DNA of 64,000 bases from Octopus sinensis (Eukaryota). Positions 6,533 to 46,037 of the stretch are shown here, one piece after another; positions within the stretch are counted from its first letter, which is position 1, and each line of letters begins with the position of its first letter. The notes under the pieces were generated by a model. The model saw only the letters and a program-made list of their open reading frames with translations. It did not search any database and was not told the DNA's origin. The stretch spans positions 25,544,001 to 25,608,000 of the forward strand of contig NC_043004.1 in NCBI RefSeq assembly GCF_006345805.1, written 5' to 3'. The position numbers were made by a program, and so were the translations under genes.

Positions 6533-6656
6533 TGTATATAACATATTTCATACTTTTCTCAAAAATAATTCTTTTTCGTGTCCATGGTTGCATCCACCCT
6601 TTCCCACCCCTGCCACCAATACCAGAAATCTCTCTTACCTGACATCCATCATCATT

Positions 6657-8230: not shown

Positions 8231-8717
8231 ATGAGTTGAGTGAGAAAAACCTTTTGGATCGCATTTCCATCTGTGATTCGCTTTATAAACGGAATGAAAA
8301 CGCACCTTTTTTAACGCAAATTGTGACAGGTGATGAGAAATGGATTATCTACCGAAATGTTCAGAGAAAGTGATCCTGGAGTAAGCGACATAAGCCACCC
8401 TTAGCCACCCCAAAAGTGGGTCTTCACCCTAAAAAAGTCTTGCTTTGTGTCTGGTGGGATTGGAAAGGAATTCTGTACTATGAACTTCTCCCAAGTAACC
8501 AGACAATTAATTCTGAGAAATACTGCACACAACTGGACGAGTTAAAAGCAGCAATTCAAGAGAAACGTCCAGAATTGGCCAACAGGAAGGGTGTTGTTTT
8601 CCATCATGATAATGCAAGACAGCGCGTTTCTTTGGGAACCAGACAAAAATTGCTGCAGCTCGGCTGGGATGTGTTACCCCAGCCACCAACCATATTCACC
8701 AGATATTGCTCCTTTGG
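8231..8717 (+). mobile_element. Mariner transposase fragment (catalytic region)
   Basis: IVTGDEKW, LHPKKVLLCVWWDWKGILYYELL, FHHDNAR, PYSPDIAP; bounded by (TA)n on both sides. Confidence 0.9.
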
Positions 8718-8722
8718 ATACA

Positions 8723-10042: not shown

Positions 10043-11100
10043 ATTGGGTTGTCCGGAAAGTTTGTGCCGATTTTGAAAGGAAAGAAAAAGGTCAATAAAT
10101 ACTTGCCATTACATTTGTAATCAACCAAATATAAACCATTTTGTTGCACAATGCGTCTCCATCTTTCCTTTAACTTGAAAATACCCTCTTTCCAGAATTG
10201 AGGTGGTTTCATGGCAAAGAATTCATCAAGGTATCTTTTTATGAACTCAGCGTATGAAACTGAAACAGCATTAAATTAAAGTAGCCATCTGTGTACGATA
10301 CTTAACATATATACACTGTTTTCCTTCAATGACATGCTATGTTAAAAATACAATATATATTTGAGTGAAGGAAACCAAAATGCATCTGACATGCCCAGGA
10401 CTTGTCACAAGGGCAATGATATAATTGCATTTATTAACACAGATGATGTAATTAAACTAAGTGAAAATTAGTGGTGTCATTGATAACTTTTTCCTTACCT
10501 CAATGATGCCGGTGACATATATCAAAAGTCCCCTTATAGAACTATATTCATAAAAAAGTGTAAAACTATATTATCACTCTCAAATTTGAGAAACACTCAT
10601 AACTTTTTTCTTTTAAAACTTCATTGTATGAGATTGATACCATGAAATTCCTCGAATTGAGCTCTATCATTTAAGCTTAATTAAAAAAGAGAAGGGTATC
10701 ACTGATTAACTTGGGATTGAAATTTTTACCATTAAGACGATTCTGCAGAGACCTGAATAAGTGGAAATCCAAAGAAGCAATATCTGGTGAATATGGTGGC
10801 TGGGATAACACATCCCAGCCAAGCTGCAGCAATTTTTGTCTGGTTCCCAAAGAAACGTGCGGTCTTGCATTATCATGATGGAAAACAACACCCTTCCTGT
10901 TGGCCAATTCTGGACATTTCTCTTGAATTGCTGCTTTTAACTCGTCCAGTTGTGTGCAGTATTTCTCAGAATTAATTGTCTGGTTACTTGGGAGAAGTTC
11001 ATAGTACAGAATTCCTTTCCAATCCCACCAGACACAAAGCAAGACTTTTTAGAGTGAAGACCCACTTTTGGGGTGGCTAAGGGTGGTTTATGTCGCTTAC
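10043..11100 (-). mobile_element. Mariner 3' half split by an unrelated block of about 475 bp
   Basis: TIR TATTGGGTTGTCCGGAAAG at 10043; C-terminus KPPQFWKEGIFKLKERW (10110-10240); catalytic part VWWDWKG...HHDNARPH...PYSPDIASLDFHLFRSLQN (10716-11100). Confidence 0.85.
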
Positions 11101-12060: not shown

Positions 12061-12476
12061 AATCCGTTCGTGTCCGTTGCCAGCCTCGGCTGGCCCCCGT
12101 GCCGGTGACACGTAAAAGCACCATCCGTTTGTGTCCGTTGCCAGCATCGCCTGGCCCCATGCCGGTGACACGTAAAAGCACCATCCGTTCGTGGCCGTTT
12201 GCCAGCCTCGCCTGGCCCCGTGCCGGTGACACGTAAAAGCACCATCCGTTCGTGGCCGTTTGCCAGCTCTGTCTGGCACCTGTGCAGGTGGCACGTAAAA
12301 AGCACCCACTACACTCGCGGAGTGGTTGGCGTTAGGAAGGGCATCCAGCCATAGAAACACTGCCAGATCTGACTGGGCCTGACGAAGCCTTCCAGCTTCA
12401 CAGACCCCAGTTGAGCCGTCCAACCCATGCTAGCATGGAAAGCGGACGCTAAATGATGATGATGATGATGATGATG
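12061..12476 (+). mobile_element. RTE LINE 3' UTR fragment with about 4 tandem 59-60-bp units and (ATG)n tail
   Basis: Matches the 3' UTR of the RT-bearing copy at 43262-46037; ends GCTAGCATGGAAAGCGGACGCTAAA(TGA)n. Confidence 0.85.
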
Positions 12477-13874: not shown

Positions 13875-14200
13875 TCATCATCATCATCATCATCATCATC
13901 GTTTAACGTCCGCTTTCCATGCTAGCATGGGTTGGACAGTTCAACTGGGGTCTGGGGAGCCCGAAGGCTGCACCAGGCCAGTCAGATCTGGCAGTGTTTC
14001 TACAGCTGGATGCCCTTCCTAATGCCAACCACTCCGAGAGTGTAGTGGGTGATTTTATGTGCCACCGACACAGGTGCCAGACGAGGCTGGCGAACGGCCA
14101 CGATCGTATGGTGTTTGTCACGTGCCCACAGCACGGAGGCCAGTCGATGCGGTACTGGCTATGGCCACGTTCGGATGGTTTTCTTGATGTTCATCTATTT
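13875..14200 (-). mobile_element. RTE LINE 3' UTR fragment
   Basis: (CAT)n followed by GTTTAACGTCCGCTTTCCATGCTAGCATGGG..., the reverse complement of the RTE tail. Confidence 0.85.
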
Positions 14201-14664: not shown

Positions 14665-15146
14665 CAAAATCAAAATCAAACCAAATCAAATCAGATATCA
14701 GAAAGCAGAACCAGAATCGAAGTCGATCAACATCAATGGAAATTGCAGCTGCGATACCAGTGCCAGTGACAAGTAAGCAAACCATCCGATCATGGCTGTT
14801 GCCAGTGCCGCCCCGACTGGTCTCCGTGCTGGTGGCACATAAAAAAGCACCATCTGTTCGTGGCTTTTGCCAGCCTCGCCTGGCCCCCGTGCCAGTGGCA
14901 CATAAAAAGCACCATCTGTCCGTGGCCGTTTGCCAGCTCCGTCTGGCACCTGTGCCGGTGGCACGTAAAAAGCACCCCCTACACTCTCGGAGTGGTTGGC
15001 ATTAGGAAGGGCATCCAGCCGTAGAAACACTGCCAGATCAGACTGGGCCTGATGCAGCCTTCTGGCTTCACAGACCCCAGTTGAACCGTCCAACCCATGC
15101 TAGCATAGAAAGCGGACGCTAAATGATGATGATGATGATGATGATG
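14665..15146 (+). mobile_element. RTE LINE 3' UTR fragment with about 3 tandem units
   Basis: Same UTR sequence and (ATG)n tail as the other copies. Confidence 0.85.
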
Positions 15147-16035: not shown

Positions 16036-16151
16036 GAAAGGTCATGTCATGACCTTTCTTAAAGGCCAATGAGATTGGACCAGGTGCCATACAGTCAGAA
16101 ATATCTTCTTAGTCACGTATTTCAACAACCATAATTGGTCAGCTATGACCT
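16036..16151. promoter_or_regulatory. Candidate nuclear-receptor element cluster (IR5 of AAAGGTCA, CCAAT palindrome, IR4-like)
   Basis: GAAAGGTCATG-T-CATGACCTTTC (16036-16058), CCAAT-GAG-ATTGG (16066-16078) and GGTCA-GCTA-TGACCT (16137-16151) in sequence I could not assign to any repeat. Motif evidence only. Confidence 0.3.
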
Positions 16152-17054
16152 ACTTTATTTTGTTGTAAAATTAATAATGTAAATTTAATTGTTTTTTAAC
16201 TTTGAAATTATCATGGTGGATTGATAACCCATTAATGGATAGCTCTAATCATTAAATATGAATCAGCTGAAAATAATTATGGCACTAATTAATACAATTA
16301 ATTAAAACTGATTTTATACATTTGTGCAAAGGAACATGTGTTCAGTTTCAAAATGGTAGCAGCAATAGCAGCAGTAGTTGTAGTTGATGGTCTCAACCTT
16401 AATAAATGACTGGTGCATAGTTTATGGCTCCAAAAGTAATAAAAGAGGTTTTAAAGTGAGTTTTAAACTATAGTGCATGGCACTATGTCAAAGGTTTTCT
16501 CCAAGTCAACAACTGCTACATGAAGTAGCTTGGGTCTTACTTAAAACTTCCTCTGTTGATGTCTCATTAAGAGTAGGTATTAGTGCTACCCTATCTTAAC
16601 ACAAACTTGAACTGCTTCTTATCTCAACTAATTTTTTTCCTAATTAGGCTTAGTTGTGCTCTATGTTTTACTGTTGATTTCATCACCTGTTCCATCTATC
16701 TAATGTTTCTTCAGCAAATCCTTTCTACAAAATCTCCTTTGCTCTTGTAGTAGTTAATGAATATATTGATACATCAGTCATTGAGAATAACCCCTCTGGT
16801 ACTACCTTACAGATTATTTGACTGACATGCACTTGTTACACTTCATTAGATATTTTCAATATCTCAATGACTATCCCTTACAGTCCAGCTGATTTTGTTA
16901 AAGGATTCTTTGACTAGGTAACTGTATAGTTTAATAGCCGCTTCCTCTGTTGGGTCTACTTGATCACCCCTCTCTTACTTGATCTGTCGGTCTTTTTCTC
17001 TCCCTCTCTCTCATTTTCACTCACCTTCCTCTCTCTTACTCCCTCTTTGTGTAT

Positions 17055-20259: not shown

Positions 20260-20673
20260 TACTCTTACTCTTACTCTTTTACTTGTTTCAGTCATCTGAC
20301 TGCGGCCATGGCGGAGCACTGCCTTTAGTCGAGCAAATCGACCCTGGGACTTATTCTTTGTAAGCCCAGTACTTATTCTATCGGTCTCTTTTGCCGAACC
20401 GCTAAGTGACGGGGACGTAAACACACCAGCATCGGTTGTCAAGCATTGCTAGGGGGACAAACACGGACACACAAACACATACACACATACATATATATAT
20501 ACATATATACGACAGGCTTCTTTCAGTTTCCGTCTACCAAATCCACTCACAAGGCATTGGTCGGCCCGGGGCAATAGCAGAAGACACTTGCCCAAGATGC
20601 CACGCAGTAGGAATGAACCTGGAACCATGTGGTTGGTTAGCAAGCTACTTACCACACAGCCACTCCTGCGCCT
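20260..20673 (-). mobile_element. Full-length SINE family A
   Basis: Near-identical to 6117-6532. Confidence 0.9.
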
Positions 20674-21260
20674 ATATATATATGTTTCAGGTAAAATATC
20701 ATTATCACCATCGTCATCACAATTATCATAACCACTACCATTACTGTCATTACCATCATTATCACCACCATTACCCTCATGATCATTCACATCAGCATCA
20801 CCACCATCATCACCATCAACCTCACCATTATTATTGTCGATTAACGGAAACACAAGGGTGTCACACTTGTAGTTTCTCAGTGCAAATCCCAATGAAATAA
20901 GCTTTGTCTTTGATATCTATGAGCTCAATGGAAGAAGTGAAGTACCAGTAATTCACTGGTATCACTAAACTTAATAGACTATAATCTTATTTCCAGTATC
21001 ATAGATTGTTATCAAATCAGCATCTGTTAGTTAAATTGAATGCCAACATCCGAAGCATGAACTGATAAAAAAAGATACTGGTAATCTTTTGGTTGATTGT
21101 GAGTTAAATAGTCATTTACAACATATACAGATAAAACAGTCTTTATCTTGTTTAAATTTATTTTGTCATTACAATAATCAGGCACCCATTTTAATGGAGA
21201 TTACTTTTATTACAAATTTAGTCTGTAGGAAAAATCCATGCTCGTGGTTTTTACAGGGTT

Positions 21261-21630
21261 TCCAAGACCAATGACCTCTGTAGGAAGGAGCTCTCTCCAT
21301 TATTATCTTTAGTCTTCCAATACCAATGACATTTGTCAGAAGGCGCTGTCTCCATAACATTCACATGTCCTCCAAGGCCAATAAGTTCTGTTGGATGAGC
21401 CCGTTTCCATGATCTTACAGGTCATAATGACCTACACAGTTGCTCCAAATCAGTGAGATCTATAAGAAGGGCTTGCTCCTATGCCCTTCACAGATCTTCC
21501 AAAATCCATAATGTCTGTAAGAATGGGAAGTTCCCATGACCTTTACTGATTGTCCAAGACCAGAGAAGTCTTTAGAAAGGGTCTCTCCTCCTGACCCAAC
21601 AGTTACTCCAACACCAGTGAAGCTTATGCA
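21261..21630. repeat. Degenerate 54-55-bp tandem repeat (about 6.5 units), one unit with an 18-bp insert forming a perfect ERE palindrome
   Basis: TCCAA anchors at 21261, 21316, 21371, 21444, 21498, 21553 and 21607 (spacings 55, 55, 73, 54, 55, 54); AGGTCA-TAA-TGACCT at 21419-21433. Confidence 0.8.
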
Positions 21631-21751
21631 GCGGTTTTAGGGGTTCCTGAGAGAACAGGACCCTTGGTTGCTTCTTGACCTCAGGTTGTCTGTGATGAAC
21701 ACAGAATTTCTTACCTCTCACCACATGAATATGTAGCTAAACAATTCTTAG

Positions 21752-21806: not shown

Positions 21807-22364
21807 GTATGTAACTTTTGTGAGCAATGTAATGTTTAGGTATGAATGCAATGTACATGTATAAATAAATGGTCTAATAAAAAAATCAAAAATGGACTTG
21901 GTTTTATATGAGAAGCAACACACAGCTAAATTCAGCCAAACAAAATAATCTTCCATTTTGTAACCAAGCTACAATGTTATAATCTTCCATTTTGTAACCA
22001 AGTTACAATGTTATTGAACTCTTGGTTTGTCTTGTAAGTATAAGACAAGCTCTTACATCTGACATACAAACATCAACATGATAGTCAAATAAGTCATTGA
22101 AAAGTTTTGCATCTCATGTATATTAGAACTTGTAGTTTTGTACTTTGGACAGACAGGTTAAGTTCTATCCTTTGGTGATTGGCCTATGTCTGGTATGACA
22201 ATACCACTGTAGTGCATACATTACTACAAACACTTATTGTATACCTTCATTGACTGATCCATCCAGTCCTTCAACACAGAATAAACCCCAAAACATAAAA
22301 TATGACCAGATAGTGATGCCCTATAAGTGCAAAAACATTCCATTCAAGACAATGGATCCATAAT

Positions 22365-24165: not shown

Positions 24166-24662
24166 ATGAATATTGCTATGTCTTTGACAGTGCATGGAGA
24201 TTTACATATTTGGCTACATGCATGCTTTACATGTGTGCCTACATGTGTGGCTACATGTGTGGCTACATGTATTACCTGTTATTTGTCTGTATGGAAACAG
24301 TGAGTCAGAGGGCAGCAACTGTAGTTTGCATGTGTGGCTAGTTTAACTGTGTAGCTTCATGTATGGCTACATGTGTGGCTACATTATTACCTGTTATTTG
24401 TTTGTCTGGAAACAGCTGATGCCTCTCTTCTTGTTCTCAAACAGGAAAATACAAAAAAAAGCTGTTGGTGTTTTCGTTTTTACTCTCCTTGGCTCCAAAA
24501 TGAATGGCTGGTGTTTGGCGGCTGGAAGGAGAAAAGAATTAACAAATGTATCCAAAGATAGGATATAAAATGATTAAAAAGCATAGCCTTCAGTAAATTG
24601 ACAGTATCAATACTAATCAAGAACTGATAGTAATAAATTATGATTTTCATTATTGGGTTGGT

Positions 24663-25291
24663 ATTATATACACTTACAGGTCATAATGACCTACACAGTT
24701 GCTCCAAATCAGTGAGATCTATAAGAAGGGCTTGCTCCTATGCCCTTCACAGATCTTCCAAAATCCATAATGTCTGTAAGAATGGGCAGTTCCCATTATA
24801 TACACTTACAGGTCATAATGACCTACACAGTTGCTCCAAACCAGTGAGATCTATAAGAAGGGCTTGCTCCTATGCCCTTCACATCTTCCAAAACCCATAA
24901 TGTCTGTAAGAATGCGCAGTTCCCATTATATACACTTACAGGTCATAATGACCTACACAGTTGCTCCAAATCAGTGAGATCTATAAGAAGGGCTTGCTCC
25001 TATGCCCTTCACAGATCTTCCAAAACCCATAATGTCTGTAAGAATGGGCAGTTTCCATTATATACACTTACAGGTCATAATGACCTACACAGGTCATAAT
25101 GACCTCCAAATCAGTGAGATCTATAAGAAGGACTTGCTCCTATGCCCTTCACAGATCTTCCAAAATCCATAATGTCTGTAAGAATGGGAAGTTCCCATGA
25201 CCTTTACCGATTCTCCAAGACCTGAGAAGTCTTTAGAAAGGGTCTCTCCTCCTGACCCAACAGTTACTCCAACACCAGTGAAGCTTATGCA
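24663..25291. repeat. 132-bp tandem array (4 units) derived from 21414-21630, carrying five perfect AGGTCAnnnTGACCT palindromes
   Basis: Unit spacings 132, 130, 132; palindromes at 24678, 24810, 24940, 25072 and 25091; the last unit runs on into sequence matching 21533-21630. Confidence 0.95.
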
Positions 25292-25849
25292 GTTAATATT
25301 ATATTTGATCAGTTACAATTCTATGGCAGGATGGCAAATTGTGCCAAGGAAAAAATACTGGGTTTAGTGGTTAGTATGAGTTCTGGAAGGAGGTTGGACG
25401 CAATATGGTTGATGGGAAGAGAAGGGATGAGATGAAAGAGCCAGAATGAAGATATCCGTAGATTGGCCTGATGTGAGAAATAGAGGCAATTGTTGTTGTG
25501 GTAGAAAAGACTGAGAAAGGAGAAATGTTGTGGGCCAGAGGGTGGAGTGTTGATCAGTGACTCAATGGCACGTGACATTTTTGTGCATATTGTCTTGAAT
25601 GTCAGATATGAGAACAGTACACCAGTAAAGGCCTCATCTGAGCATTGTAAGAGGTTAGTAATCAGACCAGGAGAGCTGCACAACTTATGGATTCACAGTA
25701 TAATAATATTTTCATTATATGTTTATTTCATGTTGTGAAAGGTGGGAAAATTACATGTTCATGGTGAATGAACGATTTCTTTTAAGCCAGGGCTGAGCAG
25801 CATTCAAGAAACTTGGACTGAAAGCCATCTGAATGTTAGAAAAGAGTTA

Positions 25850-26520
25850 ACTTGTATTGTGATAATTTGTGCCAGATATCAAAATCTCAACATCACGACT
25901 ACTGCACAATGCTCTGTGAACACTGTAAAGGCTGTATGACATGACATGGACAGCTGAAACAGAGACTATGAAGCCATGGTCAGCAAGAAGGGACACAGCA
26001 GGCATTTTGACTGCATCCATATGCAGGAATTCATCCAACAACTGCCGGACATGGTGATGGAAAAGCTGAGCAAGGGAATCCAGGCTTTGGCAAGAGTAAT
26101 GGGCACTGGAGTCATACCCATGAACCTGGCCTTAAATGAGGACTTTTGCTACCACTCATACAAGAGGTGCAAGGGACAAATTCTGACATCCAAGGCCAAG
26201 GAGAACCTCTTGATGAAGACAAAGAAGCTCTTGAACAAGATGAGGCATCCTGTTGAGCTGAGGATGATCTGGTTCTTTCAGATGAAAAGAACTTCTGCCA
26301 GGACCAGTCGCACAGCACTCAGAACAGCTGGTGGCTTGTCTACAATCTATGTGATATCCCCCGTATCATGAAAACCTAGTTACCCCAAAACTGTGATGGT
26401 TTTTGGTTGTTTCTCCAGTAACAATAATGTCATGTTACCCCACATTTTTGAACAGGGACTTAGGCTCAATTCAGATGGTTATGTGAAGCTGCTGGAGACA
26501 GTGATCAATCTCTAGTTACC
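25850..26520 (+). mobile_element. maT/DD37D-like Tc1 transposase remnant
   Basis: LLMKTKKLLNKMRHPVELRMIWFF(S)DEKNFCQD, then KTVMVFGCFSSNNNVMLPHIFEQGLRLNSDGYVKLLETV. Confidence 0.8.
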
Positions 26521-31141: not shown

Positions 31142-31695
31142 AGACATGCTTGTATAGAAATGTAGACAACTTATTTTCTGTATTCCCCACCCGCTTTACT
31201 GGTTCACCCCTGGGTTACCCCATCCATCCTTACATATGGTAAGAAACATGTCATCTTGTATAAAGCACTGTTTTAATCGTTTCTTTATTGGTCTCCAGAG
31301 CCGTTATAATAATATTCATTTGTAACCAGCTTTATGTTAATTAAATATAGATGTCAATGAAATCAACTTCAAAGGGATTAAATCTAGCAAAAGACTGTGA
31401 ATAATTTTTCAGTTTTCCCCATTAAAATTCTTCCCTGCGCCCCACCCCTGGAGGGAAATTTTTCCCTGGCTAGGAATTTCAAAAGTAGAAGACATAGAAA
31501 TAACAAAACATCGTAATATATATGTGTGTGTGTGTGTGTGTGTTAGAAATGGGAAAGACCGGTTTATGGGATTACCTTAGGTTTCCCGTCCATAAAGGGT
31601 TTAGTTTTATGGCGTATCGTCAGGTCCCAAAAAACCTGTGTGCTGCTTCTTTCGGATTTATGTTTTCTACAAACAATATATATATATATATATAT

Positions 31696-32070
31696 AGACG
31701 CAGGATTGGCTATGTAGTAAGTAGCTTGCTTACCAACCACACAGTTCCGGGTTCAGTCCCACTGCTTTCACCTTGGGCAAGTGTCTTCTGCTATAGCCTC
31801 AAGCCGACCAAAACCTTGTGAGTGGATTTGGTAGATGGAAACTAAAAGAAGCCCGTCGTATATATATGTGTGTGTGTGTGTTTGTCTCCGCATCATTGCT
31901 TGGCAACTGATGTTCGTGTGTTTATGTTCCCATAACTCAGCAGTTTGGCAGAAGAGACCAATAGAATAAGTACTAGGCTTATAAAGAATAAGTTCTGAGG
32001 TTGATTTATTCGACTAAAGGCTGTGCTCTAGCATGGGTGCAGTCAAATGACTGAAACGAATAAAAGAATA
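31696..32070 (+). mobile_element. SINE family A
   Basis: Head, CORE-like motif and tail as in the other copies. Confidence 0.85.
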
Positions 32071-33744: not shown

Positions 33745-36375
33745 GTCAACATGGCCAACATACCCTGTCTTGCACCCGACTGTGCCACGAGTTGGCCTGC
33801 AAACACCCTAGTGGAGGTACTGGCCTGCCTCATCGATCTTCATAGTGCCACTGCCCATCGGACAGCTGTGCAACTAGCCACCCCTGTGAAAGTCTCACCT
33901 GAGAAGGTCCACTGCTCTGTCATCTCTGTAGCTAGAACTAGCGAGGAGTCGGCTTACTTTGAGAAGAGATGGTTAGACTATAAACAAGCCACTTGTCTTA
34001 TGGGTAACGATGTCTTGCAGCTTCTTGAATGTTGTGATGAGACCCTTTGAAAACATCTCACATGGATGTTCGGTGTGCTGGCCTCCAGCAATGAATGAAC
34101 AGTCCTCTGTCACATTAAGTTCCTGGCTGTCCACAAATAAAATGTTATGGTTGCTCATGTGCAGCCACAAAAGAGGCACCAGGACTGGTGCATCTGTTGT
34201 GTCTTCAAGGGCAGGCAGGTCTCTGCAACTTCAAGGTGGAATGCCTCTCAGATGCCTACCATGCCATGATTGATTACAGCGATGTCATAGTTCTCAGTGC
34301 TCTTGTATGTAAGTTGGAGGACAAGGAGATCCATCTTAATATCCTGAGTGACTCCAAGCAGACATTACCCTGGAAGAAGCCCTGAGGTATGTTGAAGCAA
34401 AAATAAGTGAAAAATGCTCAGCCAGCCGGCTCATGGGCCACAGCACCATCTCAACCATTGCAGCCTTCAGCTCATATAGGCTCAAGGAGTGGTACCACCT
34501 GGTCAATAAATCCAGTGACCCCTGTGATACATCTGCCTCTACCCCCTGCAGTCACTGTGGAAAACATGGCTATAGACATCATGTACAGGAATGCATGAGG
34601 AAATGCGCAACCTACAACCACAAGTACACTATGTATGACATCCTGCATCACCATGAGAGTGTCTGCAGCCAACAACACCATCCCCAGCGGCAGGCTCAAA
34701 CCAACACAGCTGACACAGAAGACCACACATCTGCAATATTCAACAGCGTATGCTTTGTGGTTTACCTCCCTGACAAATCCACTTCCCAAGCAATAATTCT
34801 TGACCACCATGTGTATAATGAACACTGCAATGCCTGGGTGAAATGCTTTTCTGACCCCCATCTCTTCGTCACTACATTCATTCAAGCCAACCCAGCTGAT
34901 GCGAAGGCATTGGGTTTCCCCACTTCTCTTTCACAACTGACTGCAGCTATCCATCACAATGCTATGGCAGACACTGGATGTCAGTCATGCCTGGCAGGGA
35001 CAAGTCTCTTATCCAAACTGGGCCTGGACCAGCACCACCTTATACTGGTCAACATGAAAATGACTACTGCTAAGAGCAGCACCATAGATATCATCAGTGC
35101 CCTAACCTTATACGTATCCGGGACTGTTCCATCCTCTGCGAAGTGCATGACCTGTCAAATCATCTACATAAATCCTTCAACTGACAAACTTTTCCGCTCC
35201 AAGCAAGCTTGTGTCACCCTCAAGATGATTCTTCCCCATGATTGGAGAAAGCTGTGGGAATGTTGGCATACTGCTGGAAACATCTCTTGCAGTGACAACT
35301 CAGAATGTATGCGACTGCTCCCTGCAACAAATACCATCCCCTCCTCCCACTTCACTACACTTCCCAGCCACTGAGGAGAACTGTGGTTGCCTGGAGAAGT
35401 GGCTGTTAGAATACTACAGCTCAGCGCATTCAATGTCTGTGAACATCAGCAACTCCTCCAAGATGTCTGGTCTATCAATCCGCTTGATAGAGGACCCCAA
35501 TGCTAAACTAGTCGCCCATCATATGCCCATATCAGTGAAAGTAGGTCTTGACTGTGTCATTCAACTTGGAATTATTGAGCTTGTCTCCATTGGTACACCT
35601 GTCACCTGGACGAAGTCTAGAAAACCTTGATGGACTGTTGATCCTCAGCCCCTCAACTAACATACAGTCCACGAGATGCATCATACCCAATCCTTGTTCT
35701 ACCAAGCCCACTCTGTACGGGCTCACACCTGAAAAACTGTCTTCGATGCTGCAGAATTGCCTTTGATGAGAAGGACTGCCACCTAACCAGCTTCATCACG
35801 CCCTGGGACTGCTTCCGCTATTGCGTTGCACCACAGGAATATTTCACTTCAGGGGATCGCTACAGCTGATAGTTTGACAAAATTGTCTCAAGCACCACCC
35901 AAGAAAATGAAGTGCATCAACAGCACTTAGGTGTGGTTGAACACCATTGAGGAAGCATTCTTTGAGACAGTCCAATGGCTTGACATCTGCAGTTTCAGCA
36001 GCATCATTCTGAATCCCACCAAGTTCAATTTTGCCCAAACTACTGTCGAATTTGCTGGGTTTGAGATCACCCCCTACCACAGTGTGACCTTGTGCTGGAT
36101 ATCTCAAGGCAATCTGTAACTTTCTCACCCCTACGAATATCACCGACATCTGCAGCTGGTTCGGTCTGATCAACCAATTCCCCTATGCATTTGCTTCTGC
36201 TGAACGAATGTTGCCACTCTGGGAACTCCTGAAGCCAGGTACTTGGTTTGTATGGCCAAACCAGCTGAATAGACTCTTTGAGAAATCCAAATCAATCATC
36301 ATCAACGAGATCTAAAGAGGTGTGGAGATCTTTAACAAAACCAAGCCAACTTGCCTTGCCACTGACTGGAGCATA
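33745..36375 (+). mobile_element. Gypsy LTR retrotransposon internal region (gag-protease-RT-start of RNase H), decayed
   Basis: Gag RWLDYKQAT...LQLLECCDETL; protease AMADTGCQSCLAG; RT FITPW, NPTKFNFAQTTVEFAGFEIT; RNase H start LATDWS. Many stops and frameshifts; integrase absent. Confidence 0.85.
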
Positions 36376-36469
36376 CTTATTTTTGCCACAAAGAAGCCTG
36401 ACAACTCTTTGCTTCAATTTACGTAGATAAAATGTTAGTGAAAGCAATAAAGTGTTGGTGTAGGCTGTC

Positions 36470-37190
36470 CGACAGTGTGGTGTGAGACAGTGTCAGCTGC
36501 TGCATGGCAACCGCTTGATACATGAATGATGCTGAAGTTATACCATAGGGTTTTTTTCTTTCAGGTTGTGCAATTGCGAGTCCTGGATGCTGTCCGGGCA
36601 GCAATTACTAAATACTTTCAAAAGATGTTTGTGGTCAACTGCGACAATGAGATTGGTGCAACCAAGGGTGAAGTGGCATGCTTTGTCCAATGCATTGGTA
36701 ACTACCAGTGCTTCGCCCTCCACTGGTGCATAACGAGATTCTGCTGCCAAAGTGAAGCAACTCTCAACCATGGTGATGTTCCAGCCAGATTTGCAACAAA
36801 AAGGGTGGGGTGGGAAAAAGGCATTTTTGGAACCCTCAGAAGCCAATGCTGTCTTTGTTCCAGTCAGTGGCAAGGCAAGTAGGTCTGGTTTTGCCAAAGA
36901 TTTCCACACTTCTTTGGTCTCATTGATGATGATTGATTTGAATTCCTCAAAGAGTCTATTCAGCTGGTCTGTCCATACAAACCAAGTGCTTGACTGTGAG
37001 GGTGCCATTCAATTGCAGGCTGAGCAGTGTTCCCACATTTCAATAATGCCCAGCCAGAAGATGGATGTCTCTGTTCTGAAAGATATTTGTGTCATACCTG
37101 ATGCAGCTGGTCCCCCATCCAGCAATCGCCCTATTTGTTGCTCCGCCAGACTGACAAAGACTGACACAAAAGTCTGATGCACAACTGACA
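36470..37190 (-). mobile_element. Second, inverted Gypsy fragment (RT connection-RNase H)
   Basis: ORF 36538-37008: WTDQLNRLFEEFK...ESRYAPVEGEAL...LGCTNLIVAVDHKHLLKVF. Confidence 0.85.
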
Positions 37191-38815: not shown

Positions 38816-38854
38816 AGAGCAATATATGTCTATATATATGTGTGTGTGTGTGTT

Positions 38855-39648
38855 GAGTTTGTGCCAGGGAAAAGCACCACTGATGATATATTTCTGGTAA
38901 GACAGCTGCAGGAGAAATACCTAGCCAAAGATAAGCCCCTGTACCTGGCTTTCATTGACATGGAGAAACCCTTTGACAGGGTCCCCGGATCCCTTATGTA
39001 GTGGTCAGTGAGGAAACTAGGGATAGATGAATGGTTAGGGTGAGTTGTGCTAGCCATGTACAGGGACGCTGTCAGTAAGGTGAGGGTTGGCAACGAGTAC
39101 AATGAAGAATTCTGGGTAGAGGTAGGGGTCCACCAAGGTTCCGTCCTCAGCCCCTTCCTATTTATCATAGTCCTCCAGGCAATAACAGAGGAATTCAAGA
39201 CAGGATTCCCCTGGGAACTCCTCTATGTTGACAACCTTGCTCTAATTGCCGAGTCACTATCAGAACTAGAGGAGAAGATTCAAGTGTGGAAACAAGGATT
39301 AGAATCGAAGGGCCTTATAGTCAACCTAGCTAAAACCAAAGTCCTAATAAGTAGGAAGGCAGGTAAACCATAAATCCCTTCAGGTAGATGGCCCTGCTTG
39401 ATCTGTAGAAAAGGCATAGGTAGAAATACTATAAGATGTACCCAGTGTAAGCTATGGACACATAAAAGGTGCAGCAACATCAAAGGAAGGCTAACTGGGA
39501 GGATAGATTTTGTACGTGGCAGATGCTCAGGAGCAATAAATAACACTGAAAATGTGCAGAGAACAACTTCTGCCACATTCCAGGGGAAAAACTAGAAGTA
39601 GTTGATAGCTTCCATTACCTAGTTGACCTAGTCAGTAGCAGGGGAGGG
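38855..39648 (+). mobile_element. RTE LINE RT fragment
   Basis: FVPGKSTTDDIFLVRQLQEKYLAKDKPLYLAFIDMEK, GVHQGSVLSP, LLYVDNLAL (degenerate YADD). Confidence 0.9.
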
Positions 39649-39980
39649 TACACACATATCTTATTGTTGTATGTTGTGGTAAAAAGTGACTTGGACATGA
39701 AAGGGCTTCAATTGGTATGTGTTTGAAATGTAAGTGAATTTCGATGGTTGGGGATTGCATTTATTTGAGTGTATCATCTGTTAAAGTGTTTTTGTTGTTT
39801 TTCAATTGTAATTGATGTACGATTGAATAGTTAACACGCAGACTCATAATATATAGACATTTGAATAAATTTTTACAATCCAGCCGTGCTTTCACACAGA
39901 ATTTTATATTTTTCTAAACTATGACCCTGAAGTTACTTTACATATGAGGAAAGTGTCATTATGTAAATAGGAAAAATATC

Positions 39981-40517
39981 CTGAGGCAAGTGAGGATCAG
40001 AATCGAAATCGATCAATGGAAATTGCAGATGTGTTACCAGTGCCGGTGGCATGTCGAAACTCTACTTGTGAAGACCTGTTGAGGCAAGTGAGGATCAGAA
40101 TCGAAATCGATCAATGGAAATTGCAGATGTGTTACCAGTGCCGGTGGCATGTAAGAGAACCTTCCGTTTCGCAACCGTTGTCAGCACCACCCCGACTGGC
40201 CTCGTGCCGATGGCACGTAAAAAGCACCATCCGTTCGTGTCCGTTGCCAGCCTCACCTGGCCCTCGTGCCGGTGGCACATAAAAAGCACCATCCGTTCGT
40301 GGCCGTTTGCCAGCTCTATCTGGCACCTGTGCGGGTGGCACGTAAAAAGCACCCACTACACTCACGGAGTGGTTGGCGTTAGGAAGGGCATCCAGCCGTA
40401 GAAACACTGCCAGATTTTGACTGGGCCTGATGCAGCCTTCTGGCTTCACAGACCCCAGTAGAACTGTCCAACCCATGCTAGCATGGAAAACGGACGCTAA
40501 ACGATGATGATGATGAT
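39981..40517 (+). mobile_element. RTE LINE 3' UTR with a 99-bp 5' tandem duplication
   Basis: TGAGGCAAGTGAGGATCAGAATCG... occurs at about 39981 and 40080; ends in a (GAT)n tail. Confidence 0.85.
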
Positions 40518-40555
40518 ATATATTAGTCAAAACAATTTCTTGGCCTTTCTCGAAT

Positions 40556-42546
40556 GGTGATTTTTACGTGCCACCAGCATGGAAGCCAGTTTGTTGCTCT
40601 GGCAACAATCACACTTGTATGGTACTCTTAGTGCTCCACTAGCACAGATGCCAGTCATCGAATTTGGTTTCGATTTTGATTTCGATTGCCTCAACAGGTC
40701 TTCGCAAGCAGAGTTTAGTGTCCAATGAAGGAAAGGTACGCATAAGTGGGCTGGTTAAACTTATGGTCTCACTTGTGCTTGCCGAGGCTTCTCAAGCACA
40801 GCATATTTCCAAAGGTCCCGGTCACTAGTCATTGCCTCAGTGAGGCCCAATTTTCGAAGGTCATGCTTCACCACCTCATCCCAGGTCTTCCTGGGTTTAC
40901 CACTTCCACAAGTTCCCACAACCGCTAGTGTGTGGCACTTTTCTACACAGCTATCCACATCCATTCTCGCCACATGGCCATACCAGTGCAGTCATCTCTC
41001 TTGCACACCACATCTGATGCTTCTTAGGTCCAACTTTTCTCTCAACGTACTAACACTCTGTTGAGTATGCACACTGACATTACACATCCATTGGAGCATA
41101 CTGGCTTCATTCCTTCTGAGCTTACGCATGTCCTCAGCAGTCATGGCCCATGTTTCACTGCCATGTAGCATGGCTGTTCGTACACATGCATCATAGTCTA
41201 CCTTTTACTCTGTGTGAGAGGCCCTTTGTCACCAGCAGAGGTAAGAGCTCTCTGTACTTAGCCTAGGCTATTCTTATTCTAGTAGTCACATTTTCAGCAC
41301 ATTCTCCCCTGTTACTGACTAGGTCACCTAGATAACGGAAGCTATCAACTACTTCTAGTTTTTCTCCCTGGAATGTGGTGGAAGTTGTTCTCTGCACATT
41401 TTCAGTGTTTATTGCTCCTTTGCATCTGCCACATACAAAACCTATTTTCCCAGTTAGCCTTCCATAGCTTACACCGAGTACATCTTATAGAGTTTCTACC
41501 TACTCCTTTTTTACAGATCGAGCAGGGCCTTCCTACTTATTAGGACTTTGGTTTTAGCTAGGTTGACTCTAAAGCCTTTCAATTCTAATCCTTGTTTCCA
41601 CACTTGAAACTCCTCCTCTAGTTCTGATAGTGACTCAGCAATTAGAGCAAGGTCGTCAGCAAAGAGGCGCTCCCAGGGGCATCCTGCCTTGAATTCCTCC
41701 GTTATTGCCTGGAGGACTATGATAAATAGGAGGGGGCTAAGGATGGAACCTTGGTGGACCCCTACCTCTACCCAGAATTCTCCATTGTACTCGTTGCCAA
41801 CCTTCACCTTACTGACAGCGTTCCTGTACATGGCTTGCATAGCCCTCACTAAGCATTCATCTATCCCTGGTTTCCTCATTGACCACCAGATAAGGGATTG
41901 GGGGACCCTGTTAAAGGCTTCCTCCATGTCAACAAAAGCCAGATACAGACGTTTATGTTTGGCTAGGCATTTCTCCTGCAGCTGTCTTACCAGAAATATA
42001 TCATCAGTGGTGCTTCTCCCTCGCAGAAACCCAAACATCTCATCTAAACTGACTCTATCCCTAATTAGTTGGGCTATAACCCTCTCCATGACCTTCATTA
42101 CCTGATCCAACAACTTGATACTTCTGTAATTATTTGTATCTAAAGCATCACCTTTACCTTTGTAGCAGTTGACTATTATGCTGCTACACCAATCATTGGG
42201 AATGACTCCTTCGTGTATCACCTGGTTGACTATATGGGTGACTTGGCTATAGCCGACACTGCCAAATATTTTGAGCATCTCTGCAGTAATTCCTGATGGA
42301 CCGGGAGCATTCCCTGTCTTCATACTCTTAATTGCTTTATCTACCAAGGTACTGTCAACTCGGATAGCTGGTCCCTCTGTTGGGTCAACATTCAGCAGAC
42401 TCTCTTTCTCCCATTCATTTTCTTTATTCAGCAACCTTTCATAGTGGTGTCTCCAAACCTGTCTCTTTGCAGCTTAGTTTAATGCAAGTGAACCATCATC
42501 CATGCAGACACATTTCTCTCTTACAACATCACGATTCTCTCTCATA
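40556..42546 (-). mobile_element. 5'- and 3'-truncated RTE LINE with small internal deletions
   Basis: ORF 41511-42434 RT (LLFADD-type ERLFADDLAL), colinear with the 44 kb copy. Confidence 0.9.
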
Positions 42547-42573
42547 CATGTATCTCATATATATACATATATC

Positions 42574-43261: not shown

Positions 43262-46037
43262 TCATCATCATCATCATTTAGCATCTGCTTTCCATGCTAG
43301 CATGGGTCGGATGGTTCAACTGGGGTCTGGGAAGCCAGAAAGCTGCACCAGGCCCAGTCTGATCTGGCAATGTTTCTACGGCTGGATGCCCTTCCTAACG
43401 CCAACCACTCCGTGAGTGTAGTGGGTGCTTTTTATGTGCCACCGGCACAGGTGCCAGACGGGACTGGCAAACGACCACGGTCGAATGGTGCTTTTTACGT
43501 GCCACCAGCATGGGGGCCAGGCAAGGCTGGCAATGGCCATGATTGGATGGTACTTTTTACGTGCCACTGGCACGGGGGCCAGGCAAGGCTGGCAAACGGC
43601 CACGGTCAAATGGTGCTTTTTACGTGCCACCTGCATGGGGGCCAGGCGAGACTGGCAACGGCCACGATCGGATGGTGCTTTTTACGTGCCACCGGCCGGG
43701 GGCCAGGCAAGGCTGGCAACAGCCACGATCGGATGGTTCGCTTATGTGCCACCGGCACTGGTATTACAGCTACAATTTCCATTGATGTTGATCGATTTTA
43801 ATTTTGATTTTGATTTCCACTTGCCTCAACAGGTCTTCACAAGTAGAGTTTTGTGTCCCAAGAAGGAAAGGTATGCATAAGTGGACTGGCTACATCCAGG
43901 TAGAGGCCAAGGGTTATGGTCTCACTTGTCCTGCCGGGTCTTCTCACGCACAGTATACCTCCATAAGTCTCGATCTCTAGCCATTTCCTCGGTGAGACCT
44001 AAAGTTCGGAGGTCGTGCTTCACCACCTCGTCCCAGGTTTTCCTGGGTCTACCTCTTCCACAGGTTCTCTCAACCTCTAGGGTGTGGCACTTTTTTACAC
44101 AGCTATCTTCAGCCATTCTTGTCACATGACCATACCAGCGCAAACGTCTCTCTTGCACACTACAACTGATGCTTCTTAGGTCCAACTTTTCTCTCAAGGT
44201 ACTTACACTCTGTCGATTATGAACACTGACATTACACATCCATACTGGTTTCATTTCTTGCGAGCTTACGCATATCCTCAGCAGTCACAGCCCATGTTTC
44301 ACTACCATGTAGCATGGCTGTTCGTACACATGCATCATACAGTCTGCCTTTTACTCTGAGCGAGAGGCCTTTTGTTACCAGCAGAGGTAAGAGCTCTCTG
44401 AACTTTGCCCAGGCTATTCTTACTCTAGCAGTTACACTTTCAGCACACCCACCCCTGCTACTGACTTGGTCACCTAGGTAATGGAAGCTATCAACTATTT
44501 CTAGTTTTTCTCCCTGGAATGTGGTGGAAGTTGGTCTCTGCGCATTTTCAGTGTTTATTGCTCCTGAGCATCTGCCACATACAAAAACTATTTTCCTAGT
44601 TAGCCTTCCTTTGACATTGCTGCACCTCTTATGTGTCCATAACTTACACTTGGTGCATTTTATAGAGTTTCTACCTACTCCTTTTCTACAGATCGAGCAG
44701 GGCCATCTACCTGAAGGCGTTTGTGAAATGTCTACCTTCCTACTTATTAGGACTTTGGTTTTAGCTAGGTTGACTCTAAGGCCCTTCGATTCTAATCCTT
44801 GCTTCCACACCTGAAACTTCTCCTCCAGTTCTGATTGTGACTCAGCAATTAGAGCAAGGTCATCAGCATAGAGGAGCTCCCAGAGGCATCCTGTCTTGAA
44901 TTCCTCCGTTATTGCCTGGAGGACTATGATAAATAGGAGGGGGCTGAGGACTGAACCTTGGTGGACCCCAACCTCTACCCGGAATTCTTCACTGTACTCG
45001 TTGCCAACCCTCACCTTACTGGCAGTGTCCCTGTACATGGCTCGCACAGCTCTCACTAACCATTTATCAATCCCTAGTTTCCTCATTGACCACCAGATAA
45101 GGGATCGGGAGACCCTGTCGAAGGCTTTCTCCATGTCAACAAAAGCTAGGTATAGGTATTTCTCCTGCAGCTGTCTTACCAGGAATATAGCATCAGTAAT
45201 ACTTTTCCCTGGCACGAACCCAAACTGCATCTCATCTAAACTAACTCTCTCTCTAATTAGTTGGGCTATAACCCTCTCCGTAACCTTCATTACCTGATCC
45301 AGCAGCTTGATACTCCTGTAGTTATTTGTATCTAGGGCGTCACCTTTACCTTTGTTGCAGTTGACTATTATGCTGCTACACCAGTCATTGGGAATGACTC
45401 CTTCGTGTATCACCTGGTTAACTATACGGGTGACTAGGCTATAGCCGACACTACCAGATATTTTGAGCATCTCTGCAGTAATTCCTGATGGGCCTGGGGC
45501 TTTCCCTGTCTTCATGCTACTAATTGCCCTAACTACCATAGAACTGTCATCTCGGTTAGCTGTTGGGTCGACATTCGGCAGACTCTCTTTCTCCCATTCA
45601 TTTTCTTTATTCAGCAACCTTTCATAGTGGTGTCTCCAAACCTCTCTCTTTTCAGCCTCTATTAGCGCAAGTGAACCATCATCCATGCGAACACATTTCT
45701 CTCCTACCACATCACGATTCTCTCTCACACACTTTCTTGCAACACGAAATACCTCAAGTCTTTTATCCTCACGGCGCAGAACATTGGCAAATTTTTTCTT
45801 ATCTGCTTCCCCTCTGGCTAAATACACCTGCCTCCTAGCTTCCCTTCTAGCAGTCTGATACACTTCCCTGCTATCACCGTTCTTCCAGTCCTTCCAAGCC
45901 TTTTTCTTTTGTCTAATAGCCCTGTCAACAATATTGTTCCGCCACCACGTTATTTTGGGTCTTGAGGGGACTTTGCATCAACCACAGATCTGGTCAGTGG
46001 CTCTCAGCAGGTTGTCCCTTAGAGACTTCCAGTTGTC
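43262..46037 (-). mobile_element. 5'-truncated RTE LINE, youngest copy, with 3' UTR VNTR and (ATG)n tail
   Basis: Long RT ORF, frameshifted C-terminus (43922-44254), about 5 tandem UTR units, and a tail at 43262-43277. Confidence 0.95.
44232..45863 (-). CDS. RTE-clade reverse transcriptase (543 aa, no endonuclease domain; pseudogene)
   Basis: KAPGPSG, KGKGDA..NNYRSIKLL, AFVDMEKAFDRV, GVHQGSVLSPLLF, LLYADD, PHD-like CxxC motifs, LHGSETW. Confidence 0.9.
   Translation of the reverse strand: MYQTARREARRQVYLARGEADKKKFANVLRREDKRLEVFRVARKCVRENRDVVGEKCVRMDDGSLALIEAEKREVWRHHYERLLNKENEWEKESLPNVDPTANRDDSSMVVRAISSMKTGKAPGPSGITAEMLKISGSVGYSLVTRIVNQVIHEGVIPNDWCSSIIVNCNKGKGDALDTNNYRSIKLLDQVMKVTERVIAQLIRERVSLDEMQFGFVPGKSITDAIFLVRQLQEKYLYLAFVDMEKAFDRVSRSLIWWSMRKLGIDKWLVRAVRAMYRDTASKVRVGNEYSEEFRVEVGVHQGSVLSPLLFIIVLQAITEEFKTGCLWELLYADDLALIAESQSELEEKFQVWKQGLESKGLRVNLAKTKVLISRKVDISQTPSGRWPCSICRKGVGRNSIKCTKCKLWTHKRCSNVKGRLTRKIVFVCGRCSGAINTENAQRPTSTTFQGEKLEIVDSFHYLGDQVSSRGGCAESVTARVRIAWAKFRELLPLLVTKGLSLRVKGRLYDACVRTAMLHGSETWAVTAEDMRKLARNETSMDV

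What the first reader, a model, noticed from the sequence alone, without database searches (positions are those of the whole stretch)
24663..25291. Tandemly amplified array of perfect estrogen-response-element palindromes
Seen: four 130-132-bp units each carry AGGTCA-TAA-TGACCT, and in the last unit the palindrome is duplicated 19 bp apart. That gives five perfect copies (24678, 24810, 24940, 25072, 25091) in about 430 bp, plus a sixth in the donor locus (21419). Units differ elsewhere (point changes, a 2-bp deletion) while the palindrome is unchanged. Established: AGGTCAnnnTGACCT is the consensus ERE, and molluscan ER orthologues, including Octopus ER, bind EREs and activate transcription constitutively without estradiol. 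Inference: a natural multimerised ER/ERR enhancer built by local duplication and tandem expansion, possibly varying in copy number between individuals. Caveat: all copies descend from one event and the array is young, so their identity is weak evidence of selection. A rough independent-base estimate puts one chance hit at about 10^-3 per 64 kb, but fold-back repair makes palindromes more often than that.
Basis: partly seen in the sequence, partly recalled or inferred. Interest (0 to 1): 0.75.

Follow-up and report, generated by a model that had tools for sequence, protein, structure and literature searches.

The report
Young minisatellite carrying ERE-like palindromes
A short piece of an old repeat was copied 3 kb downstream and then tandemly amplified, multiplying a sequence that matches the consensus oestrogen-receptor binding site; the structure is real, but nothing shows it is more than an ordinary by-product of local duplication.

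Summary
A 132-bp-period array (24663-25198, four units, then a 94-bp tail to 25292) carries five exact AGGTCATAATGACCT palindromes. A sixth sits at 21419 in a 98-99% identical source segment (21414-21631).

The source lies inside an old, decayed ~55-bp-period minisatellite (21257-21657). The palindrome sits in 18-19 extra nucleotides found only in sub-unit u3. Its right arm is a native sub-repeat motif. The copied 218 bp starts and ends inside that periodic structure, so the copy went from donor to array. A 10-bp leader plus 122 bp were then amplified four times, and a microhomology slip in unit 4 made the fifth palindrome.

About nine mutational events fall in the 122 shared columns and none hits the palindrome, which has a chance probability of about 0.3. 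That is no sign of selection. Half-sites are not enriched in the window. No host exon, structured RNA or open reading frame was detected nearby, and the surroundings are SINE, LINE and microsatellite debris with several other young tandem duplications. The unit is not dispersed within the window.

Most likely this is a neutral young minisatellite with a passenger ERE motif. ER binding is biochemically plausible but untested. Published work on one mollusc argues against ERR binding. Interest is low.

The parts
21257..21657 (+). Old, decayed minisatellite of about 55-bp sub-units u1-u7 (starts 21257, 21312, 21367, 21440, 21494, 21549, 21603). Consensus TCTTCCAAnACCAATGAnGTCTGTAnGAAGG..CCATGAnnTTnACAG.
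   Evidence: Anchor spacing 55, 55, 73, 54, 55, 54. Alignment A2. The nhmmer profile hits only this region and the array.
21367..21439 (+). Sub-unit u3, the only over-long unit (73 nt). The extra 18-19 nt create the palindrome.
   Evidence: The right arm aligns in register with the sub-repeat 3' motif, and the left-arm context resembles the reverse complement of the u5 5' motif.
21414..21631 (+). Donor segment of 218 bp (last 26 nt of u3, u4, u5, u6, first 29 nt of u7) that was copied downstream.
   Evidence: BLAST, nhmmer and alignment give 98-99% identity to the array, with both ends internal to the periodic structure.
21419..21433 (.). Original AGGTCA-TAA-TGACCT palindrome (7-nt arms AGGTCAT/ATGACCT around a central A).
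24663..24672 (+). 10-bp leader ATTATATACA, absent from the donor and repeated at the head of every unit. It is target-site or filler sequence that was captured into the amplified unit.
   Evidence: Alignment A1.
24663..24794 (+). Array unit 1 (132 bp). Differs from the donor at 1 of 122 shared positions.
24795..24924 (+). Array unit 2 (130 bp). Has a 2-bp AG deletion and three point changes.
24925..25056 (+). Array unit 3 (132 bp).
25057..25198 (+). Array unit 4 (142 bp). Keeps the donor state A at alignment column 156, so it is probably the original copy. It contains the slip that made the fifth palindrome.
25093..25105 (+). 13 nt GTCATAATGACCT replacing TTGCT after the second ACAG. This is a template slip with microhomologies ACAG and CT, and it created the palindrome at 25091.
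   Evidence: Read directly from alignment A1 and the sequence.
25199..25292 (+). Unamplified 94-bp tail of the copied segment (end of u5, u6, first half of u7). Homology with the donor stops at ...GCTTATGCAG.
24678..24692 (.). Palindrome copy in unit 1.
24810..24824 (.). Palindrome copy in unit 2.
24940..24954 (.). Palindrome copy in unit 3.
25072..25086 (.). Palindrome copy in unit 4 (first).
25091..25105 (.). Palindrome copy in unit 4 (second, from the slip). The two adjacent copies can pair into a 14-bp hairpin.
   Evidence: z = -4.4.
25298..25304 (+). ATTATAT, identical to 24663-24669. A possible 7-bp target-site duplication flanking the inserted copy, but it may be chance in AT-rich DNA.
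   Evidence: Read from the sequence. Not tested statistically.
25184..25198 (.). Second perfect palindrome of the copied segment, ATGGGAA-G-TTCCCAT (also at 21523-21537). It is degraded in units 1-3.

Best explanation
This is a young, probably neutral minisatellite produced by a nested series of local duplication events, and the ERE-like palindrome is a passenger. Step 1 (shown): the region 21257-21657 is an old, decayed tandem array of about 55-bp sub-units. Step 2 (shown as anatomy, mechanism inferred): sub-unit u3 gained 18-19 extra nucleotides. These placed an AGGTCAT next to the sub-repeat's native ATGACCT motif and made AGGTCAT-A-ATGACCT. The cause was an inverted template switch or a direct slip. 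Step 3 (shown): 218 bp from inside this array (21414-21631) were copied in direct orientation about 3.2 kb downstream. Step 4 (shown): a 132-bp block, made of a 10-bp leader and the first 122 bp of the copy, was amplified to four head-to-tail units with a 2-bp AT microhomology at the junction, as expected for replication slippage or unequal exchange. Step 5 (shown): a microhomology-mediated slip in unit 4 duplicated the palindrome 19 bp away. The sequence would very probably bind a steroid-receptor-type DNA-binding domain in vitro because it is a perfect consensus site. Nothing indicates that it was built or kept for that purpose, or that it regulates a gene.
For: Array and palindromes. Donor-array homology of 98-99% with sharp ends at 21414/21631. 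The 55-bp periodicity, with u3 the only 73-nt unit. TGACCT recurs on the + strand at 21272, 21428, 21537 and 21676, so it is a native motif, and AGGTCA on the + strand occurs only at 21419. Both ends of the copied piece lie inside the donor's periodic structure. About nine events in 122 columns with none in the 15-nt palindrome gives P = 0.27-0.31 by chance. A second perfect palindrome in the same unit took three of those events. Half-sites are not enriched, 42 against 38.7 +/- 7.4. Other young tandem duplications lie nearby (34 bp x2 at 21945, 24226/24342, and 12-bp arrays). An independent 21-nt palindrome on the same core lies at 16037. Perfect 6-3-6 palindromes in general are about twice the Markov expectation in this window. 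No ORF, Pfam domain, Rfam family or tRNA lies at or around the loci. The neighbourhood is TE and microsatellite debris.
Against: Neutrality is inferred from the absence of any signal, not demonstrated. The array is too young for conservation tests to have power in either direction. Five perfect consensus EREs within 430 bp is the design of a strong synthetic reporter, so incidental ER recruitment cannot be excluded. No other genome, population sample or chromatin data could be consulted: the two metagenome scans and four exact-protein look-ups found nothing, and the protein collection holds no close relative of this genome. The mechanism of the 218-bp ectopic copy is not resolved.
Confidence: 0.75

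Rival explanations
1. The array is a functional, newly born ER-dependent enhancer. The mollusc ER is a constitutive activator, binds the five perfect EREs cooperatively and raises transcription of a nearby gene, and unit number tunes the output.
For: The sites are perfect consensus IR3 AGGTCA palindromes. Mollusc ERs activate constitutively and a mollusc ER DBD binds the consensus ERE (PMC3886901 and PMC3778743). In human, EREs inside repeats, including microsatellites, can be bound and contribute to enhancer activity (PMC2853111).
Against: There is no excess conservation, no recognisable host exon within several kb and none seen in the window, and the context is repeat-dense. The spacer TAA is not the C(A/T)G type enriched at bound vertebrate sites, and only 2.2% of perfect human core EREs were occupied in MCF7 cells. 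The mollusc ERR tested did not bind the ERE. CpG o/e is very low (0.08, but only 2 CpGs).
Confidence: 0.1
2. The unit is part of a dispersed transposable element or satellite family. The two loci are then independent insertions or array members, not a local donor-copy pair.
For: Both loci share the same right-hand boundary (...GCTTATGCAG) with unrelated flanks. A possible 7-bp ATTATAT duplication flanks the array copy. The window does contain a TE-borne tandem repeat, the 62-bp arrays in LINE 3' tails.
Against: A profile of the sub-repeat and the 218-bp segment hit only these two loci in 64 kb, while real SINE and LINE families have 5 to 9 or more copies there. The shared boundary falls in the middle of sub-unit u7, and the donor's periodicity continues past it. 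There is no TE protein, TIR or LTR around either locus. No related ORF exists in the protein collection, but this is weak evidence because the genome is not represented there.
Confidence: 0.07
3. The copy number, or the whole array, is an assembly artefact.
For: Tandem repeats of about 130 bp at 94-99% identity are prone to mis-assembly. The 2-bp deletion in unit 2 could be a read error.
Against: Each unit carries its own substitutions, and units share nested derived states (column 156 C in units 1-3, column 133 C in units 2-3), as expected of real sequential duplications. This cannot be tested without reads.
Confidence: 0.05
4. The repeat encodes something: a repetitive peptide, or a cluster of hairpin RNAs such as microRNA precursors.
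For: The 132-bp period is a multiple of three. The units fold slightly better than shuffles (z about -2, and -4.4 for unit 4).
Against: All six frames are interrupted at both loci. Units of 130 and 142 bp break any frame, and the sub-repeat period is 54-55 bp. There are no Pfam hits and no homologue among 5.8 billion proteins. The hairpins are only 6-13 bp, with no stem of about 22 bp. Rfam finds nothing.
Confidence: 0.03

Closest known systems
Minisatellites / VNTRs formed by replication slippage or unequal exchange
   Same: Head-to-tail units of about 130 bp, 87-98% identity between units (94% matches by TRF), unit-specific variants, a 2-bp microhomology at the unit junction, further slippage inside a unit, and location in repeat-rich non-coding DNA.
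   Different: The amplified unit is itself a recent ectopic copy of part of an older, finer-period (55 bp) minisatellite, which gives three nested levels of repetition. Copy-number polymorphism, the usual hallmark, could not be checked.
Repeat-borne oestrogen response elements in vertebrates (Alu, MIR and microsatellite EREs; Mason et al. 2010, PMC2853111)
   Same: A consensus or near-consensus ERE is carried and multiplied by repetitive DNA rather than arising at a promoter.
   Different: Those elements were identified by ER occupancy and, for some, by reporter assays. Here there is only sequence. They spread by transposition, whereas this one spread by local tandem duplication. The spacer is TAA rather than the C(A/T)G enriched at bound sites.
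Synthetic multimerised ERE reporters (for example 3xERE constructs) and the paired EREs of vitellogenin genes (from my own knowledge)
   Same: Several perfect IR3 AGGTCA palindromes lie close together, an arrangement known to give cooperative ER-dependent activation in vertebrate assays.
   Different: The spacing here is 130-132 bp (and once 19 bp), not tens of bp. No promoter or gene is nearby, and activity is untested.
Microhomology-mediated template switching and templated insertions (MMBIR, FoSTeS or polymerase-theta-type repair; from my own knowledge)
   Same: The unit-4 event replaced 5 nt with 13 nt copied from 19 bp upstream, bounded by the microhomologies ACAG and CT. A 218-bp piece was copied from 3.2 kb away, and short perfect palindromes have arisen nearby.
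   Different: The mechanism is inferred from junction sequences only. The junctions of the 218-bp copy show no clear microhomology.

Membership tests
Consensus oestrogen response element (sequence motif) | Two AGGTCA half-sites in inverted orientation | tested here: met
   Six exact AGGTCAnnnTGACCT sites.
Consensus oestrogen response element (sequence motif) | A spacer of exactly 3 bp (IR3) | tested here: met
   The spacer is TAA in all six. The palindrome at 16039 is IR5 and does not qualify.
Functional ER-dependent enhancer | ER occupancy and accessible chromatin in vivo | not testable with these tools
   No chromatin or binding data are available.
Functional ER-dependent enhancer | Palindrome-dependent transcriptional activation | not testable with these tools
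   This requires reporter assays.
Functional ER-dependent enhancer | The motif is conserved beyond neutral expectation | tested here: inconclusive
   0 of about 9 events fall in 15 of 122 columns, P = 0.27-0.31. The array is too young for the test to have power, and no orthologous sequences could be obtained.
Functional ER-dependent enhancer | A target gene within reach | tested here: inconclusive
   No non-TE Pfam domain in ten selected ORFs of at least 110 aa across the window, or in ORFs of at least 50 aa between 17 and 30.5 kb. Short exons and genes beyond 64 kb would be missed.
Functional ER-dependent enhancer | Spacer of the C(A/T)G type enriched at bona fide vertebrate ER sites | tested here: not met
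   The spacer is TAA. The criterion comes from PMC2853111, is a vertebrate tendency only, and is not an absolute requirement.
Minisatellite / VNTR | Head-to-tail units of 10 to a few hundred bp with high identity | tested here: met
   TRF period 132, 4.0 copies, 94% matches, and alignment A1.
Minisatellite / VNTR | Unit variants consistent with stepwise duplication | tested here: met
   Nested shared states at A1 columns 133 and 156, plus private changes.
Minisatellite / VNTR | Copy number varies between individuals | not testable with these tools
   No reads or other individuals are available.
Dispersed TE-internal tandem repeat | Many dispersed copies | tested here: not met
   Only the two loci are hit in 64 kb by BLAST and nhmmer, whereas SINE and LINE families have 5 to 9 or more copies. 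A genome-wide count was not possible.
Dispersed TE-internal tandem repeat | Association with TE termini or coding regions | tested here: not met
   No TIR or LTR and no TE domain at or beside the loci. The copy boundaries fall inside sub-units.
microRNA / hairpin RNA cluster | One hairpin of about 60 nt or more per unit with a stem of about 22 bp, or a match to a known RNA family | tested here: not met
   The stems are 6-13 bp. Rfam gives no hit.
Coding tandem repeat | An open frame maintained across units | tested here: not met
   Stops occur in all six frames. Unit lengths of 130 and 142 bp shift the frame. No Pfam hit or homologue.

The most novel reading that the evidence does not exclude
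A minisatellite has just created a natural 5x perfect-ERE platform in a mollusc whose ER is a ligand-independent activator. If it is accessible, it would act as a constitutive enhancer tuned by copy number, caught at birth, with unit number varying between individuals and altering expression of a neighbouring gene. It would be the first in-genome ER target described in a mollusc.
Probability: 0.07. Interest if true: 0.6.

Novelty: new member of a known kind. Interest (0 to 1): 0.2.

Why it matters
If the array did recruit the mollusc ER, it would give a concrete genomic target for a receptor whose in vivo binding sites are unknown; PMC3778743 states this ignorance explicitly. It would also be an example of enhancer birth by tandem duplication. 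As the evidence stands, its main value is as a cautionary case. A perfect match to a well-known motif, multiplied by a duplication, looks highly non-random in shuffle tests but represents a single mutational origin riding on an ordinary minisatellite. The locus is also a tidy illustration of nested slippage and template-switch events and of how short palindromes arise from repeat motifs.

Tried and rejected
1. Coding exon or pseudo-exon. The donor's periodicity and splice-like GTAAGT after the palindrome on the minus strand suggested a repeat-protein exon. I rejected this because there are stops in all frames, no Pfam hit in six frames, and a period of 54-55 bp.

2. Retrieving the locus from other assemblies. 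Exact look-ups of four window ORFs found nothing on record. A search of the array ORF against 5.8 billion proteins gave no hit.

3. Species check. A search with the intact LINE ORF gave best hits of 50-59% identity, none named as a cephalopod. The octopus origin is therefore unverified, and the null results in item 2 are weak evidence.

4. Two metagenome DNA scans, one with a palindrome-containing 21-mer and one with a palindrome-free 28-mer, gave 0 hits.

5. Literature string searches for the palindrome and for the SINE core gave 0 papers.

6. MicroRNA or hairpin array. Only short stems are present.

7. Rfam and tRNA scans of the window found nothing.

8. Empty-site reconstruction from other copies of the flanks was not possible, because the flanks are unique in the window.

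I replaced them with X-spaced ORF concatenations.

10. Origin of the left arm. An inverted copy of the u5 5' motif is the best match (14/17), but 34 of 500 shuffles score as well, so this stays unresolved.

Full report
**1. The observation**

The described sequence is there. Tandem Repeats Finder reports one array at 24663-25198 with period 132, 4.0 copies, 94% matches and score 917. AGGTCATAATGACCT occurs exactly at 21419, 24678, 24810, 24940, 25072 and 25091. Allowing up to two mismatches finds no further sites, only the minus-strand readings of the same six (12 rows), against 0.23 +/- 0.49 matches expected in dinucleotide shuffles. With any spacer and one mismatch allowed, these six are the only ERE-type sites in the 64 kb.

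Aligning the units (A1) gives unit lengths of 132, 130, 132 and 142 bp, followed by a 94-bp unamplified tail. Homology to the upstream locus ends at 25292.

From base composition, one perfect ERE is expected 2.8e-3 times per 64 kb. That is about 108 per 2.5 Gb of sequence with this composition. A single occurrence is therefore rare per window but expected many times in a large genome. The six copies are one origin multiplied by duplication.

**2. Anatomy and history**

- **The donor is an old minisatellite.** The upstream locus is not a plain unique sequence. CCAA-type anchors recur at 21261, 21316, 21371, 21444, 21498, 21553 and 21607, giving spacings of 55, 55, 73, 54, 55 and 54. Aligning the sub-units u1-u7 gives a shared consensus, TCTTCCAAnACCAATGAnGTCTGTAnGAAGG..CCATGAnnTTnACAG (A2). 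This is an old, decayed minisatellite with a period of about 55 bp. TRF no longer detects it.
- **The palindrome sits in the one over-long sub-unit.** Only u3 is 73 nt, and the palindrome lies in its extra 18-19 nt.
- **The right arm is native to the repeat.** TGACCT recurs on the + strand at 21272 (u1), 21428 (u3), 21537 (u5) and 21676 (u8). AGGTCA on the + strand occurs only at 21419. The right arm aligns in register with the 3' end of the sub-repeat (11/13 to u4).
- **The origin of the left arm is unresolved.** Its context, TCTTACAGGTCATAATG, matches the reverse complement of the u5 5' motif best (14/17), but 34 of 500 shuffles score as well. An inverted template switch is mildly favoured over a direct slip.
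- **The copy went from donor to array.** The segment shared with the array is 21414-21631: the last 26 nt of u3, then u4, u5 and u6, and the first 29 nt of u7. Both ends lie inside the donor's periodic structure, which fixes the direction as donor to array and argues against a shared transposon terminus.
- **The array was then amplified.** At the array, a 10-bp leader (ATTATATACA) absent from the donor heads every unit. Amplification therefore followed the insertion and used a 132-bp block with a 2-bp AT microhomology at its junction.
- **Unit 4 is probably the original copy.** Alignment column 156 is A in the donor and in unit 4 but C in units 1-3. Column 133 is C in units 2 and 3 only.
- **A slip in unit 4 made the fifth palindrome.** ACAG|TTGCT|CC became ACAG|GTCATAATGACCT|CC, a templated slip bounded by the microhomologies ACAG and CT.
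- **A possible target-site duplication.** ATTATAT occurs at 24663-24669 and at 25298-25304. This may be chance in AT-rich DNA.

**3. Tests bearing on function**

- **Conservation.** Ten variable columns, about nine events, fall in the 122 columns shared by the donor and the four units, and none falls in the 15-nt palindrome. The chance probability of this is 0.27-0.31. A second perfect palindrome in the same unit, ATGGGAA-G-TTCCCAT, took three of the nine events. Neither count departs significantly from uniform expectation.
- **Motif density.** AGGTCA half-sites number 42 in the window against 38.7 +/- 7.4 expected, even with the array included.
- **Palindromes in general.** Perfect 6-3-6 palindromes are about twice as frequent as in Markov simulations: 49 against 22 overall, and 21 against 5.9 for arms with at least 3 G/C, before removing duplicated copies. 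An independent 21-nt palindrome on the same core, AAAGGTCATG-T-CATGACCTTT (IR5), lies at 16037-16057. Short palindromes evidently arise readily here.
- **Coding or RNA function.** All frames are closed. There is no Pfam hit in six frames, no homologue of the array ORF, no Rfam family and no tRNA. The hairpins are only 6-13 bp. Units give z of about 0 to -2 (three of the four folds of units 1-2 near -2). Unit 4 gives z = -4.4 because its two palindromes pair with each other.
- **Genomic context.**
  - The 3 kb between donor and array holds SINE copies, (TG)n, (GA)n and (AAC)n tracts and 12-bp minisatellites.
  - Other young tandem duplications lie alongside: 34 bp x2.1 at 21945, and 24226-24300 against 24342-24415.
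  - The wider window contains mariner, LINE and LTR-type fragments.
  - I found no non-TE Pfam domain in ten selected ORFs of at least 110 aa across the window, or in non-low-complexity ORFs of at least 50 aa between 17 and 30.5 kb. Short exons would escape this test.
  - CpG o/e is 0.35 for the window and 0.08 for the array.
- **Dispersed-family test.** BLAST and an nhmmer profile of u1-u7 hit only 21257-21651 and 24698-25302; the next best hit has E = 0.36. A neighbouring SINE has at least nine copies in the window. The 62-bp arrays belong to the 3' tails of a LINE present in about five copies. The unit therefore behaves as locally duplicated unique sequence.

**4. External evidence**

I could not obtain related sequence from elsewhere:

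- Four exact-protein look-ups found nothing.
- One large protein search found nothing.
- Two metagenome scans found nothing.
- The window's intact LINE ORF has no relative above 59% identity over its full length. The collections therefore do not cover this genome, and these nulls are weak.

The octopus attribution could not be verified. A SINE core that I recall from memory as typical of octopus occurs eight times, but the literature search did not corroborate it.

- Mollusc ER LBDs, including that of Octopus vulgaris, are constitutive activators (PMC3886901).
- The Marisa cornuarietis ER DBD binds GGTCAnnnTGACC (PMC3778743).
- The same paper reports that the mollusc ERR did not bind the ERE, and that nothing is known about EREs in mollusc genomes.
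- In human MCF7 cells only 51 of 2,310 perfect core EREs (2.2%) were ER-occupied.
- In that study bound sites favour a C(A/T)G spacer, and about a third of bound EREs lie in repeats, including microsatellites (PMC2853111).

**5. Interpretation**

The best-supported account is a neutral, young minisatellite built by nested slippage and template-switch events, with an ERE-like palindrome as a passenger (confidence about 0.75). The site would very probably bind an ER-type DBD in vitro. That is a property of the sequence and not evidence of a regulatory role.

The rivals are:

- a real ER-driven enhancer (about 0.10);
- a dispersed TE or satellite family (about 0.07);
- an assembly artefact (about 0.05);
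- a coding or RNA function (about 0.03).

**6. Comparison with what is known, and novelty**

The object meets the sequence definition of a consensus ERE and the structural definition of a minisatellite. Every testable criterion for a functional enhancer was either not met or inconclusive, and the decisive criteria cannot be tested with these tools.

The closest known cases are repeat-borne EREs in vertebrates. The differences are that those were defined by receptor occupancy and spread by transposition. I rate this a new member of a known kind, with low interest (0.2).

The most novel reading not excluded is a copy-number-tunable constitutive ER platform caught at birth, which I give a probability of about 0.07.

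Noticed in passing
window 16037-16057: An independent 21-nt perfect palindrome, AAAGGTCATG-T-CATGACCTTT, lies in unique sequence. Its AGGTCA half-sites are spaced as IR5, not IR3. ATGACCTAC, the same 9-mer as in u3, lies about 100 bp downstream at 16146-16154.
   Followed up: partly
window 21523-21537 and 25184-25198: A second perfect 7-1-7 palindrome, ATGGGAA-G-TTCCCAT, contains a kB-like GGGAAGTTCC. It is intact in the donor and in unit 4 but degraded in units 1-3 by three of the roughly nine substitutions in the array.
   Followed up: partly
window 12062-12476, 13879-14179, 14701-15146, 40057-40530, 43262-43851: The 62-bp tandem arrays are the 3' tails of a LINE family and occur in both orientations. 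They are a true TE-borne dispersed tandem repeat within the same window.
   Followed up: partly
window 43922-45863 (-), 40657-42548, 38853-39649: A LINE has an apparently intact 543-aa ORF (RVT_1 plus a weak, sub-threshold PHD-finger match) and an adjacent 110-aa ORF. Two further degraded copies are 84-87% identical. The nearest database relatives are only 50-59% identical over the full length.
   Followed up: partly
window 8381-8719 (+) and 10767-11100 (-): Two mariner-type transposase fragments (Pfam Transposase_1) are 96% identical to each other and lie in inverted orientation about 2 kb apart.
   Followed up: partly
window 20260-20689 and at least 9 other sites (e.g. 6115-6550, 53277-53675, 31686-32070): An abundant SINE-like family is followed by microsatellites. 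Its core GGCAYCTTGGGCAAGTGTCTT occurs 8 times against 0 expected. ARAGORN and Rfam recognise no tRNA-like head.
   Followed up: partly
window 21945-22014; 24226-24300 / 24342-24415; 24228-24270; 24348-24384: Several other young local tandem duplications lie beside the two loci: 34 bp x2.1 at 97%, a pair about 116 bp apart at 88%, and 12-bp arrays. The neighbourhood appears prone to slippage.
   Followed up: no
window 34433-37177: This region has higher GC and overlapping ORFs on both strands, including an RT_RNaseH match (36538-37008, minus strand). It is probably a degraded LTR retroelement.
   Followed up: no
window 25816-26499 vs 50480-50738: The 131-aa ORF just right of the array (25976-26371) has no Pfam hit. 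Its flanks match a second locus at about 50.5 kb (77-78%), which suggests another decayed repeat.
   Followed up: no
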